Shown piece after piece: positions 21,772-23,674 of a DNA stretch of 64,000 nucleotides. Every line of letters begins with the position of its first letter. The stretch's first letter is position 1. The stretch comes from Iphione sp. A-MEVVRFRX5 (lineage: Eukaryota): the NCBI GenBank assembly GCA_976226885.1, contig OZ320322.1, forward strand, positions 15,128,001 to 15,192,000, given 5' to 3'. Position numbers and translations under genes: made by a program. The notes under the pieces were generated by a model. It made no database searches. It was not told the DNA's origin and was given only the letters and a program-made list of their open reading frames with translations.

Positions 21772-23674
21772 CTAAATTCCATTAGCTGTTGATAATCTAT
21801 CTCTTACACGCATCAAAGCTTTTCCCAGAATGTTTTCCCCTTTTGCTTTACTCAATGATTTCTTATTTGTGATCCAGGGCCCTTCCCCATTCCCCAGGTA
21901 GTTATCCAATTCGCAGAGAATGGTCGCATTAGTGCCAGTTAGCAGTAGGGCTGCACAAGCTTCAAGATTCAGTTCATATTTACTCATCAGCAATTCATCA
22001 AGTGTTACCTCTATACGATCTTGCCATGACTTGGTTGATTCAACTTTGACATCTATCTTTTTAGCTTCCTGGCCTCCTCTAGCATTCAGTATTTCGCGTT
22101 CCGTTTTCTTATTATTGACGAACCTACCTTTCTCAGCCTGTAGTGCCACCTCGATGTTCTCGTACAATCTCCTGTGGAACGAGATTGGAGACTTTTCAAA
22201 CGTTGAGAAATTTTTTGCATCATTTGTCAAATAAGTTGTATTACCAATCAACTTTGTCGAATTTAAGCCCAAATTCCATCTTTTGGGAATTTTGTTCAAA
22301 TCCCTTTGCGCATGTTTCTCTCCATCAATATAAATGTCAAGGCCATGCACTGACACCTTGCTGCCATCATGCCATGCAGCAGCCACGGCCTTGTTTAGTT
22401 TCCAATGCGCCTTGAGTGCTCTTGGTGGTATGTCTTCTCGAAAAAACACCCTGCCACAGCCTGGTAGTTTTGACAGGTTAGCCCTTTTATTCAATGCCAA
22501 ATCTTGTCCTCACTTGAGTTGAATAGCACACCCATTAGCTTTGTTTTGGTACTGTCATCTAAGCAGACCACTTCGGAGATTGCCTGTTATCCATCCCTGT
22601 CGATCCTTTTACTACATCATACGTGAATTTGATAGCATTAACCAACTCATGATTTGGCACCCCTTCTACTAGCATCTTATGGGACCTGTCATAAATTTCC
22701 ACCTGCGATAGATCGCCATCGATTGTGTCATATTCACGTTGAGTAATCGCAAGCCATTTGTCCAGCCTGTCAGTTTTCCTGTCCAGCTGTAGTATATCTG
22801 TGCAATTGACACCTATGTTAGACCGTAGTTCCTCAAGGTCTGACCTAGCGCGTGCTATCTCAACTCTTAGCTCACTTATACCTGACTCCATTAATTTACC
22901 CAGGTTGCTGATTTCCACTGCTAGATCAACAGTGTCCGGATCAACATCTGCATTATGACCACTTGTGTCAGGAGATCTCGGTGTCATGTGTCGACCGCTA
23001 GAGCCATCCACGTCCACATCCAATGTGTCAACACCACCAGAACCATGTGTGTTGTCCAGGTGTATACCAGTTGTGTTGACATGATTGTCCTTCCCACTGG
23101 ACTGGTCAGCTCCAGCGTCGTGGTGCGCAGCGCCCACACTGCCTCCACTGGAGCTGACACTGTCATCGTTGCGACTGTCACTCTGACAGCCTTGACACTC
23201 GTCATCGACTGGCTCAGGGGTTGTGTTACAAGCCTTGTTTACACCATTGGCAAGCTCCTTAGAATTCTCACTAGTAGACATTGTAAGGCACTCACTCTGT
23301 CCAATTGCCTCAACTTGTGTAGTCTGAGATGTGGCTGTTGCTGTGGGTGAGTTTGCGTCAGCTGTCACTTTGTTTACATCGTGCCCTATGCTCGCTGTCT
23401 CTCCTGCCTTGCCCTTATTGCTTCCCTTTCTTTCCCTTTTATCACTCGCCTTCCGAGGTTGACTGGGGAAATCCATCAGATCGTCCACTGTGAGGTGTTT
23501 GTGCCTCAATTTGGACATAGATCGAAGCACTGGGGTGTTACCTAATGTTCCCCTATGAATCGGTGTTATTGGTAACCTGGGCATGGTGTGTAACTGCCTG
23601 ATGTCGAGAGACCCACGGACACACTCACTCTCGTACTGCCGCCATTTTTCTCTTATACAGTTAGGACTCAACAT
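21772..23674 (-). pseudogene. LINE ORF1: low-complexity region, coiled coil, RRM-like region and C-terminal NADAR (YbiA-like) domain; one frameshift near 22550
   Basis: Coiled coil, then EIYDRSHKMLVEGVP. NADAR motifs at ~21790-22235: NFSTFEKSP..YENIEVALQAEK, AKK, W, LLLTG, DNYLGNG, GENILGKALMRVRDRL. Confidence 0.85.

What the first reader, a model, noticed from the sequence alone, without database searches (positions are those of the whole stretch)
21772..22500. LINE ORF1 fused to a NADAR (YbiA-like) ADP-ribose/N-glycosidase domain
Seen: ORF1 of a CR1-group LINE ends in a full NADAR motif set (E in YENIEVALQAEK, D in DNYLGNG, GENILGKALMRVR). A second, quite divergent LINE in this window has the same fusion, so it is a family trait rather than a chance neighbour. 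Established: NADARs include E. coli YbiA and the DarT1 antitoxins that remove ADP-ribose from guanine in DNA, and occur in some phages and nidoviruses. Guanine-modifying ARTs exist in animals (pierisin, clam CARP-1). Known LINE ORF1 accessory domains are PHD, esterase and CCHC; I do not recall NADAR being described there. Inference: the RNP carries an anti-ADP-ribosylation enzyme that protects RNA or cDNA during TPRT.
Basis: partly seen in the sequence, partly recalled or inferred. Interest (0 to 1): 0.92.

Follow-up and report, generated by a model that had tools for sequence, protein, structure and literature searches.

The report
NADAR enzyme domain on LINE ORF1
Two dead copies of a jumping gene (LINE) in this window each carry a NADAR enzyme domain, a family known to strip ADP-ribose from DNA and RNA bases, at the end of their RNA-packaging protein. 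The fusion is real, widespread and under selection elsewhere, but it has already been mentioned once in the literature.

Summary
Window 21775-22500 (-) is a 242-aa ORF whose residues 98-236 match Pfam NADAR (E 1.4e-16). Its AlphaFold model (pLDDT 88.6) matches Phytophthora NADAR 8BAU and E. coli YbiA. A second LINE, only 27% identical, has the same domain at 44135-44593 (-).

In both copies NADAR ends ORF1, after a coiled coil, RRM and CTD. A degenerate SGNH-like ORF and APE-RT follow. Both copies are pseudogenes.

The fusion is a family trait. 129 of the 150 best database hits are ~450-aa ORF1 proteins with a C-terminal NADAR. In five of five autonomous loci examined, ORF1-NADAR, an SGNH ORF and APE-RT lie in that order.

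Catalytic residues are kept in about 95% of representatives. dN/dS in the NADAR part is 0.01-0.05 in one family. The RT is nearest Jockey-type elements, not Tx1/L1.

It is not undescribed: PMC12477816 (2025) notes NADAR domains in ORF1 of oyster "Tx1" LINEs in Repbase. This scan has also flagged the fusion many times in this genome.

In both window copies the last-strand Glu lies two residues closer to the conserved Asp than in the family. The proposed de-ADP-ribosylation of LINE RNA or cDNA is plausible but untested.

The parts
22562..23674 (-). Copy 1, ORF1 N-terminal part: low-complexity head, coiled coil and start of the RRM (KMLVEGVPNHE at 22678-22646)
   Evidence: 371-aa ORF. hhalign to the N-terminal half of the ORF1-NADAR alignment A1: E 6e-6, probability 85%. 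Weak match to copy 2.
22494..22580 (-). Copy 1, middle of the RRM, readable only in another frame (two frameshifts, near 22589/22580 and 22497/22494)
   Evidence: Three-frame translation and motif coordinates.
22210..22500 (-). Copy 1, end of the RRM plus a CTD-like helix and three-strand module, residues 1-97 of the 242-aa ORF
   Evidence: 129 database proteins match this stretch together with NADAR. AF2 elements H26-44, E49-64, H65-70. Non-significant Foldseek lead to mouse L1 ORF1p CTD 2jrb, TM 0.48.
21793..22209 (-). Copy 1, NADAR domain (residues 98-236). Glu117 and Lys124 are present; the last-strand Glu195 is 2 residues, not 4, before the conserved Asp197. ORF1 stop codon at 21772-21774.
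   Evidence: Pfam E 1.4e-16. AF2 pLDDT 88.6. Foldseek: 8BAU target TM 0.71, 2B3W target TM 0.73. Residue tables.
20911..21417 (-). Copy 1, middle ORF: degenerate SGNH-hydrolase homologue. Block I is lost and block V reads N..T instead of D..H.
   Evidence: 31% identity to the copy 2 middle ORF, E 9e-16. hhalign to the SGNH-ORF alignment A4: E 5e-5 over 151 columns.
19210..20200 (-). Copy 1, APE endonuclease in two ORF pieces
   Evidence: Weak, sub-threshold Pfam Exo_endo_phos and Exo_endo_phos_2 matches, plus position and strand.
18085..18814 (-). Copy 1, reverse transcriptase pieces. The element breaks off just after the YADD motif (18240-18205).
   Evidence: Pfam RVT_1 E 6.7e-9. tblastn with L001/L002 RT stops at about 18193.
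44505..45284 (-). Copy 2, ORF1 head, coiled coil, RRM and CTD
   Evidence: 259-aa ORF. tblastn match to copy 1 ORF1, E 0.004.
44135..44593 (-). Copy 2, NADAR domain, in a different frame from the RRM/CTD and preceded by a stop. The last strand reads Y-V-D-P-D.
   Evidence: Pfam NADAR E 8.4e-12. Family HMM 79 bits. Residues.
43444..43986 (-). Copy 2, middle ORF, homologous to the copy 1 middle ORF
   Evidence: tblastn E 9e-16. No direct hit to A4.
41166..41735 (-). Copy 2, APE endonuclease
   Evidence: Pfam Exo_endo_phos E 5.7e-8.
39176..40393 (-). Copy 2, reverse transcriptase (one in-frame stop at 40001-40003) and a C-terminal WNSLP motif at 39211-39176
   Evidence: Pfam RVT_1 E 1.5e-15 and 7.3e-15. 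tblastn with L001 RT: 27.6% identity over 434 aa, E 1e-43. Motif coordinates.

Best explanation
What it is (shown): two decayed insertions of three-ORF LINEs of the Jockey/CR1 superclade. Their ORF1 protein is an L1-type RNA-packaging protein (coiled coil, RRM, CTD) extended at its C-terminus by a YbiA-type NADAR domain. This is a large, old family in which the NADAR part is the best-conserved stretch of ORF1p and is under strong purifying selection. How it most likely works in live members (inferred): ORF1p coats the element's RNA, so the NADAR N-glycosidase is held at high local concentration on the RNP. There it removes ADP-ribose that ADP-ribosyltransferases have attached to guanine or cytosine. 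The substrate would be the LINE RNA template, or the single-stranded target DNA and cDNA exposed during target-primed reverse transcription, which keeps them readable by the reverse transcriptase. That would make it a retrotransposon counter-defence or self-repair enzyme, analogous to phage NADARs and viral macrodomains. The two window copies are pseudogenes and do nothing now. I put the identity at about 0.95 and this mechanism at about 0.35-0.4.
For: Identity: Pfam NADAR in both copies. The family profile hits 8BAU at 6e-37 and YbiA at 6e-29. The AF2 model (pLDDT 88.6) matches both folds at probability 1.00. Family trait: 129 of the 150 best representatives have RRM/CTD plus a C-terminal NADAR. 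The order ORF1-NADAR, SGNH ORF, APE-RT holds in L001, L002, L007, L008 and L009. Selection: of 129 representatives, Ser is kept in 128, the first Glu in 124, Lys/Arg in 124, Trp in 129 and the last-strand Glu in 122. NADAR has the highest mean pairwise identity of the ORF1p regions, 34% against 28-29% for RRM/CTD. dN/dS is 0.01-0.05 at dS up to 0.7. Biochemistry from the literature: NADARs of all four families, including YbiA-type and a sponge enzyme, hydrolyse G-ADPr, and the NADAR and YbiA families also hydrolyse C-ADPr, on both ssDNA and ssRNA (PMC12945103). Guanine-specific CARP-1 ART homologues are concentrated in Bivalvia. Phage NADARs act as counter-defence (PMC11825919, abstract). Recurrent capture by RNA-handling selfish modules: a CCHC-NADAR ORF1 next to an APE ORF in L010, a cap-methyltransferase-NADAR fusion, and a Gypsy Pol NADAR.
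Against: No activity, substrate or expression data exist for any LINE NADAR. No ADP-ribosyltransferase was found or could be searched for in this genome. E. coli YbiA also has a metabolic N-glycosidase role, so the fold does not fix the substrate (PMC11543638). In both window copies, and in one separate clade of six representatives, the canonical last-strand Glu column holds a non-acidic residue with an acid two positions later. That clade also varies the first Glu and the Lys, so some lineages may have changed or lost catalysis. The dN/dS figure comes from a 2-kb ORF1-only family with no APE-RT nearby, not from autonomous LINEs.
Confidence: 0.42

Rival explanations
1. The domain is an active N-glycosidase or hydrolase, but its substrate is not an ADP-ribosylated base. 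It might act on RNA ends (ADP-ribosylated 5' phosphates, NAD-type caps) or on a small metabolite, as E. coli YbiA does. It would then shape the 5' end or stability of the LINE transcript.
For: NADAR is fused to an mRNA cap guanine-N7 methyltransferase in P0147 and in a 126-member giant-virus cluster. YbiA cleaves riboflavin-pathway intermediates, and the authors state that non-DarT NADARs may have other physiological targets (PMC11543638). PMC12477816 itself suggests RNA processing.
Against: Every NADAR tested so far removes G-ADPr. No cap- or end-directed activity of a NADAR has been reported in the papers read here.
Confidence: 0.2
2. The domain removes ADP-ribose from proteins, either ORF1p/ORF2p themselves or host factors. 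This would be like viral macrodomains that undo antiviral PARP marks, or it would tune PARP signalling at the integration nick.
For: PARP1/PARP2 ADP-ribosylation occurs at L1 integration sites and promotes retrotransposition (review PMC8535693). The PARP-family protein ZAP restricts LINEs (PMC4423928, title). One metagenomic relative combines NADAR with a Macro domain (P0212).
Against: No protein de-ADP-ribosylation by a NADAR is reported in the papers read. The family chemistry is N-glycosidic cleavage at nucleobases.
Confidence: 0.12
3. The domain is mainly a binding module, for ADP-ribose/PAR or for nucleic acid, that docks the RNP at PARP-marked DNA breaks. Catalysis is dispensable, at least in lineages such as the window's where the last-strand acid has moved.
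For: Seven of 129 representatives and both window copies lack Glu at the canonical column. The separate six-member clade also replaces the first Glu (by Asp or Thr) or the Lys (by Met). Host multi-NADAR proteins have many repeats without the first Glu.
Against: About 95% of lineages keep the full catalytic set, which binding alone would not require. An acid at +2 on the same strand face may still be catalytic, as the shifted Asp is in DarT1-linked NADARs (PMC11543638).
Confidence: 0.12
4. The juxtaposition is accidental: a host NADAR gene fragment or a gene-model artefact lying next to a LINE.
For: In the window, NADAR is in a different frame from the upstream ORF1 part in both copies.
Against: The ORFs are continuous in 129 representatives and in L001, L002, L007, L008 and L009, with APE-RT downstream. 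The order is the same in two window copies that are 27% identical. The frame breaks fall inside the RRM/CTD, as expected of decay.
Confidence: 0.01

Closest known systems
Repbase 'Tx1' LINE families of Crassostrea gigas with NADAR in ORF1p (noted in PMC12477816, Genome Biol 2025)
   Same: A YbiA-family NADAR domain sits inside a LINE ORF1 protein of a lophotrochozoan. It is the same kind of fusion, and the authors likewise suggest a role on the RNA intermediate.
   Different: The prior description is one sentence with no architecture, selection or residue analysis. The label is Tx1 (L1 superclade), whereas the NADAR-linked RT modelled here is closest to Jockey-type RTs (25-28% identity) and far from Tx1 (19%). 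The Repbase sequences could not be inspected here. The window copies also have a shortened Glu-Asp spacing.
ZfL2-1/CR1-type ORF1p with an SGNH esterase (PMC3905857)
   Same: A coiled-coil ORF1p carries an enzyme domain. An SGNH hydrolase also belongs to the elements studied here.
   Different: There the esterase is part of ORF1p, which lacks an RRM, and it was called the only enzymatic function among ORF1ps. Here ORF1p has RRM-CTD plus NADAR, and the SGNH hydrolase is a separate ORF between ORF1 and ORF2.
Mammalian L1 ORF1p (coiled coil, RRM, CTD)
   Same: The order of coiled coil, RRM and CTD-like module is the same. One of 50 relatives hits Pfam Transposase_22, and Atlas structure neighbours are L1 ORF1-like.
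   Different: L1 ORF1p has no enzymatic domain, and its ORF2 belongs to another clade.
Phytophthora nicotianae NADAR (8BAU) and E. coli YbiA (2B3W)
   Same: Same fold (target TM 0.71-0.73). Same first Glu, Lys, Trp and GxNxLG motifs.
   Different: Those are stand-alone enzymes. The window copies have Glu-x-Asp rather than Glu-x3-Asp on the last strand.
Phage T4 gp30.3-type NADAR and DarG1 antitoxins
   Same: A mobile element carries its own NADAR to undo base ADP-ribosylation. This is the working analogy for the proposed mechanism.
   Different: The phage type has His and the DarG1 type has Asp at the last-strand position (PMC11125620). No DarT-like ART lies next to the LINE. The host is an animal.
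Ectocarpus Gypsy elements with NADAR at the N-terminus of Pol (PMC12477816)
   Same: A retrotransposon has captured a YbiA-family NADAR.
   Different: That is an LTR element, the fusion is to Pol rather than the RNA-packaging protein, it is in a brown alga, and it appears to be of bacterial origin.

Membership tests
NADAR superfamily (Pfam PF08719) | Sequence match above the curated Pfam threshold | tested here: met
   Copy 1: 61.6 bits against a cut-off of 35.1. Copy 2: 46.1 bits.
NADAR superfamily (Pfam PF08719) | YbiA fold (helical core flanked by small sheets) | tested here: met
   AF2 pLDDT 88.6. Foldseek: 8BAU and 2B3W at probability 1.00, target TM 0.71 and 0.73. No other hit below E 1.
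NADAR superfamily (Pfam PF08719) | First catalytic Glu and phosphate-binding Lys (E88/K95 of E. coli C7 NADAR; E43/K50 of 8BAU) | tested here: met
   Glu117 and Lys124 in copy 1, and the equivalent Glu and Lys in copy 2. Of 129 family representatives, 124 keep Glu and 124 keep Lys/Arg.
YbiA family within NADAR | Glutamate in the last beta-strand (Asp in BC4488/DarG1, His in phage NADARs) | tested here: inconclusive
   The family keeps Glu in 122 of 129. For the window copies, the ungapped HMM alignment and phmmer against YbiA put Leu (copy 1) or Tyr (copy 2) at the canonical column and Glu195 or Asp two residues later. MAFFT instead aligns Glu195 to the column by opening a gap.
NADAR superfamily (Pfam PF08719) | N-glycosidase / de-ADP-ribosylase activity | not testable with these tools
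   This needs enzyme assays. The window copies are pseudogenes.
DarT1-NADAR (DarTG1) toxin-antitoxin | NADAR gene adjacent to a DarT-type ADP-ribosyltransferase | tested here: not met
   The neighbours are LINE ORFs (SGNH, APE, RT) in the window and in L001, L002 and L007-L009. No ART domain was reported.
APE-type LINE | APE endonuclease and RT downstream on the same strand | tested here: met
   Copy 2: Exo_endo_phos E 5.7e-8 and RVT_1 E 1.5e-15. Copy 1: RVT_1 E 6.7e-9 with weak APE matches.
   The L001 RT model matches Swiss-Prot BS, jockey and X-element best (E about 1e-22, 25-28% identity), against Tx1 and L1 at 19%. Swiss-Prot holds no CR1 entry, and the window's own RT was linked only through 27.6% identity to L001 and a shared C-terminal WNSLP motif. 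An L1/Tx1 affiliation is unlikely; CR1 proper is not shown.
L1-type (type II) ORF1p | Coiled coil followed by RRM and CTD | tested here: inconclusive
   hhalign of the window's N-terminal ORF to family alignment A1: E 6e-6. Coiled-coil Pfam hits, and one Transposase_22 hit in 50. Atlas structural neighbours are L1 ORF1-like. The CTD match to 2jrb is not significant.
SGNH hydrolase (middle ORF) | Block I Ser and block V Asp-x-x-His | tested here: not met
   These residues are kept in L001, L002 and L007-L009 (invariant DS.G and DG.H; PDB 3p94 at 2.5e-5). In the window, copy 1 lacks block I and reads N..T at block V, and copy 2 reads IDDR and GAGH.

The most novel reading that the evidence does not exclude
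ADP-ribosylation of nucleobases by host ARTs, such as CARP-1/pierisin-type enzymes that are abundant in bivalves, is an animal defence against retrotransposons. LINEs of lophotrochozoans have answered by fusing a NADAR eraser to their RNA-coating protein, and other mobile elements have captured NADAR independently for the same reason. A corollary is that a sizeable part of the 'animal NADARs' counted in databases are transposon proteins.
Probability: 0.25. Interest if true: 0.85.

Novelty: new member of a known kind. Interest (0 to 1): 0.5.

Why it matters
ORF1 proteins of LINEs are thought of as RNA chaperones, and the SGNH esterase was described as their only enzymatic function (PMC3905857). 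A second, strongly conserved enzyme on ORF1p, from a family whose known chemistry is erasing ADP-ribose from DNA and RNA bases, points to an unstudied conflict between retrotransposons and nucleic-acid ADP-ribosylation in animals. It also provides a concrete protein to test. The physiological role of animal NADARs is called unclear in the field (PMC11125620), and many database 'animal NADARs' may in fact be LINE ORF1 proteins. For this window the result is modest: two dead copies of an element type that has been noted in print once and is seen repeatedly in this genome.

Tried and rejected
1. Organism and expression. The look-up of sequencing runs listed no run. Database hits were almost all unnamed ENA or Logan proteins, so taxa rest on a few Atlas records (Annelida), one Haliotis protein and the oyster paper.

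2. RT clade by names or by PDB. The named-protein search gave no names. PDB holds only L1 and R2 (RT E 6e-10 to L1, no APE match), which is not decisive. The Atlas names were generic.

3. NADAR phylogeny. A quick IQ-TREE run on 165 domains was poorly resolved. The ORF1 fusions needed 8 changes, and several 'stand-alone' NADARs sit on ~1.3-kb contigs and may be fragments. The tree therefore supports no claim of single or multiple capture. The window pair groups at SH-aLRT 98, but both branches are long.

4. Programmed frameshift between RRM/CTD and NADAR. I considered this because both window copies change frame. I rejected it because intact relatives have one continuous ORF.

5. Middle-ORF homology. 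BLASTP of the window middle ORFs against the L001 and L002 SGNH ORFs found nothing. Copy 2 against profile A4 also found nothing. Only copy 1 against A4 worked.

6. Linkage in the P0013 family. No APE-RT lies within 7 kb and the shared unit is only about 2 kb. The dN/dS result therefore comes from ORF1-only units.

7. Literature. 'NADAR' searches are swamped by an author name. 'NADAR domain'+ORF1 gave one paper, and DUF1768+transposable gave none.

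Full report
**The observation**

The 242-aa ORF at 21772-22500 on the minus strand is real. Residues 98-236 match Pfam NADAR (PF08719) at E 1.4e-16, 61.6 bits against a curated cut-off of 35.1, covering profile positions 13-162 of 163. The ORF stops five residues after the match.

A second NADAR lies at 44135-44593 (-). Pfam scores it at E 8.4e-12. It is 27% identical to the first over 145 residues. 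A family HMM run over all six reading frames finds these two copies and nothing else in the 64 kb.

An AlphaFold2 model of the 242-aa ORF, built with 106 homologues, is confident (pLDDT 88.6, pTM 0.77). Its only significant PDB neighbours are two NADAR structures:
- Phytophthora nicotianae NADAR 8BAU: E 7e-7, target TM 0.71.
- E. coli YbiA 2B3W: E 2.5e-6, target TM 0.73.

The family profile hits the same two chains by sequence, at 6e-37 and 6e-29.

**Surroundings in the window**

Both NADARs sit in minus-strand LINEs with the same order of parts.

| Part | Copy 1 | Copy 2 |
|---|---|---|
| Low-complexity head, coiled coil, RRM start | 23674-22562 | 45284-44505 |
| RRM end + CTD-like module + NADAR, then stop | 22500-21775 | 44593-44135 |
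| Middle ORF | 21417-20911 | 43986-43444 |
| APE | 20200-19210 | 41735-41166 |
| RT | 18814-18085 | 40393-39482 |

- The copy 1 head and coiled coil align to the N-terminal half of full-length relatives (hhalign E 6e-6).
- The copy 1 RT breaks off just after YADD.
- Copy 2 has a C-terminal WNSLP motif at 39211-39176.

Both copies are pseudogenes:
- Copy 1 needs two frame changes inside the RRM, near 22589/22580 and 22497/22494.
- Copy 2 changes frame within 44562-44594 and has a stop just before the NADAR.
- Both have broken ORF2s.

Because intact relatives have one continuous ORF1, these breaks are decay and not programmed frameshifting.

**A family trait**

An exhaustive HMMER search of 1.84 billion representatives gave 316 hits at E up to 1e-3. 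Of the 150 best, each a separate 50%-identity cluster, 129 match both the RRM/CTD part and the NADAR part of the query. In those proteins the match is preceded by a median 192-residue head and followed by a median 7-residue tail. All 50 tested members hit Pfam NADAR.

None of the best 150 listed is more than 33% identical to the window ORF, so the window's lineages are not closely represented.

I fetched the genomic context of several relatives. L001, L002, L007, L008 and L009 come from at least four different samples. Each shows ORF1-NADAR, then a 183-247-aa ORF, then APE-RT on the same strand.

The middle ORFs of these five loci keep an invariant DS.G block and a DG.H block. Four of the five hit Pfam Lipase_GDSL_2 weakly, and their profile finds GDSL lipase 3p94 in the PDB at 2.5e-5. 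They are SGNH hydrolases.

The copy 1 middle ORF in the window aligns to that profile (hhalign E 5e-5), but it has lost the catalytic residues. Copy 2 matches copy 1 (E 9e-16) but not the profile.

**Which LINE clade**

An AF2 model of the L001 RT (pLDDT 86.7) was compared with Swiss-Prot models:

| Swiss-Prot RT | Identity | E-value |
|---|---|---|
| BS, jockey, X-element | 25-28% | about 1e-22 |
| R1 | 18-21% | 1e-16 to 5e-16 |
| Tx1 | 19% | 2e-13 |
| L1 | 19-20% | 7e-13 to 4e-11 |

The APE domains hit Pfam PF14529 and find no L1 endonuclease in the PDB. The copy 2 RT in the window is 27.6% identical to L001 (E 1e-43) and shares its C-terminal motif.

The elements therefore belong to the Jockey/CR1 superclade and not to L1/Tx1. 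Swiss-Prot has no CR1 entry, so 'CR1 proper' is not shown.

**Is the NADAR under selection?**

Counts across the 129 ORF1-NADAR representatives:

| Position | Kept in (of 129) |
|---|---|
| Ser of the SNF motif | 128 |
| First catalytic Glu | 124 |
| Phosphate-binding Lys (or Arg) | 124 |
| Central Trp | 129 |
| Last-strand Glu | 122 |
| Gly of GxN | 126 |
| Final Gly | 129 |

NADAR is also the most conserved region of ORF1p. Mean pairwise identity is 34%, against 28-29% for RRM and CTD and 15% for the head.

In four paralogous copies of one family (L003-L006), the NADAR codons give dN/dS of 0.01-0.05 at dS 0.07-0.7. One caveat applies. That family is a ~2-kb unit that starts sharply at a TGACGTCAC motif and contains only ORF1-NADAR, with no APE-RT within 7 kb. 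It may be a non-autonomous ORF1-only element or a host gene family.

**The window copies' catalytic set**

Both copies have the first Glu and the Lys. On the last strand the family reads L-x-E-A-T-x-D-x-x-W-G. Copy 1 reads I-L-C-E-L-D-N-Y-L-G and copy 2 reads I-Y-V-D-P-D-Q-T-L-G.

The alignments disagree on how to read this:
- The ungapped HMM alignment puts Leu or Tyr at the Glu column and an acid two residues later.
- phmmer against YbiA puts the canonical Glu opposite a gap in the window and aligns Glu195 with YbiA's second Glu, nearer the conserved Asp.
- MAFFT instead opens a gap and aligns Glu195 to the Glu column.

The neutral description is that the acid is 2 residues, not 4, before the conserved Asp. 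A separate, well-supported clade of six representatives has the same acid-x-Asp pattern (N/Y-C-D-x-D). That clade also varies the first Glu or the Lys.

The two window copies are 27% identical and group together in the NADAR tree (SH-aLRT 98, on long branches). The trait is therefore probably ancestral to both and not post-insertion damage.

In a beta-strand, residues i and i+2 face the same side. DarT1-linked NADARs use an Asp two residues away from the canonical Glu (PMC11543638). A displaced acid may therefore still work, but this is inference. An earlier follow-up in this scan (s1-327774) read this as loss of the key residue. My data agree on the canonical column and add the acid at +2.

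**Mechanism**

Shown:
- The domain is a NADAR.
- It is fused to the RNA-coating protein of the element.
- It is conserved.

From the literature:
- NADARs cleave the N-glycosidic bond between ADP-ribose and guanine N2. All four families tested remove G-ADPr.
- The NADAR and YbiA families, including a sponge enzyme, also remove C-ADPr, on ssDNA and ssRNA alike (PMC11543638, PMC11125620, PMC12945103).
- CARP-1-type guanine ARTs are found mainly in Bivalvia.
- Phages carry orphan NADARs to defeat DarTG1 (PMC11825919, abstract).

Inferred: ORF1p concentrates the enzyme on the LINE RNA and at the TPRT intermediate, where it erases base ADP-ribosylation that would block reverse transcription.

Rivals:
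- Another substrate, such as RNA ends or caps. NADAR is fused to a cap methyltransferase in P0147 and in giant viruses.
- Protein de-ADP-ribosylation, given PARP activity at L1 integration sites (PMC8535693).
- A non-catalytic binding role.

None of these can be separated without assays.

**Comparison with what is known**

The held literature contains one relevant statement. PMC12477816 (Genome Biology 2025) reports NADAR at the N-terminus of Gypsy Pol in Ectocarpus. [quoted passage not shown] Other searches found nothing further.

It has not been characterised.

This report adds:
- fold confirmation;
- the size and conservation of the family;
- selection evidence;
- the Jockey/CR1-type backbone;
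- the constant three-ORF layout with a separate SGNH hydrolase;
- a second ORF1 architecture with NADAR, a CCHC knuckle plus NADAR followed 98 nt later by an APE ORF in L010;
- the shifted last-strand acid in the window's lineages.

The scan's own notes show the same fusion flagged many times in this genome.

**Verdict**

The window holds two dead members of a real, widespread, barely studied LINE type that has already been noticed in print. The family is of moderately high interest. This particular instance is of moderate interest.

Noticed in passing
L003-L006, about 6806-8830 in each locus (ENA ERZ25069853): A ~2-kb dispersed unit begins sharply at a TGACGTCAC (CRE-like) motif and holds only an intact 535-545-aa ORF1-NADAR. 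No APE-RT lies within 7 kb. The copies are about 92% identical, with whole-ORF dN/dS of 0.01-0.06 at dS up to 0.66. It may be an ORF1-only non-autonomous element (HAL1-like) or a domesticated gene family.
   Followed up: partly
L010:190-2452 (ENA ERZ23877643): A different LINE ORF1 architecture: a zf-CCHC knuckle directly before NADAR in a 551-aa ORF1, followed 98 nt downstream by an ORF that opens with an APE endonuclease. There is no SGNH ORF in between.
   Followed up: partly
P0001 (Haliotis rufescens XP_048255699.1, 4240 aa); P0022, P0004, P0026: These proteins are made of 2-7 tandem NADAR domains with no RRM/CTD. In P0001 the last four repeats are 642 residues apart. Many repeats lack the first catalytic Glu. 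They may be host genes or merged gene models.
   Followed up: partly
P0147 (386 aa); P0212 (335 aa): Two other fusions appear among the hits: mRNA cap guanine-N7 methyltransferase plus NADAR (the Atlas shows a 126-member Nucleocytoviricota cluster of this type), and NADAR plus Macro domain.
   Followed up: no
window 24290-28450 (+): A run of plus-strand ORFs has LTR-retrotransposon gag-pol features, including an RT YLDD motif near 26411-26638 and integrase-like ORFs at 27483-27967. It lies directly upstream of the 5' end of copy 1.
   Followed up: no
window 41736-43443 (-): In copy 2, 1.7 kb separates the middle ORF from the APE start, against about 0.7 kb in copy 1. No ORF of 80 aa or more lies in that stretch. 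It may be an insertion or an extra decayed segment.
   Followed up: no
window 63637-63867 (-) and 37289-37777 (+): Further LINE RT fragments: a 77-residue match to the thumb region of the L001 and L002 RTs at 63867-63637, and a 162-aa plus-strand ORF that looks like an RT C-terminal region.
   Followed up: no
window 14000-18000: An AT-rich stretch (GC 0.32-0.34) begins right where the copy 1 RT is cut off after YADD. The ORF runs out into a KIKIKIK-coding simple repeat at about 18085. It may be a deletion or the edge of an insertion.
   Followed up: no
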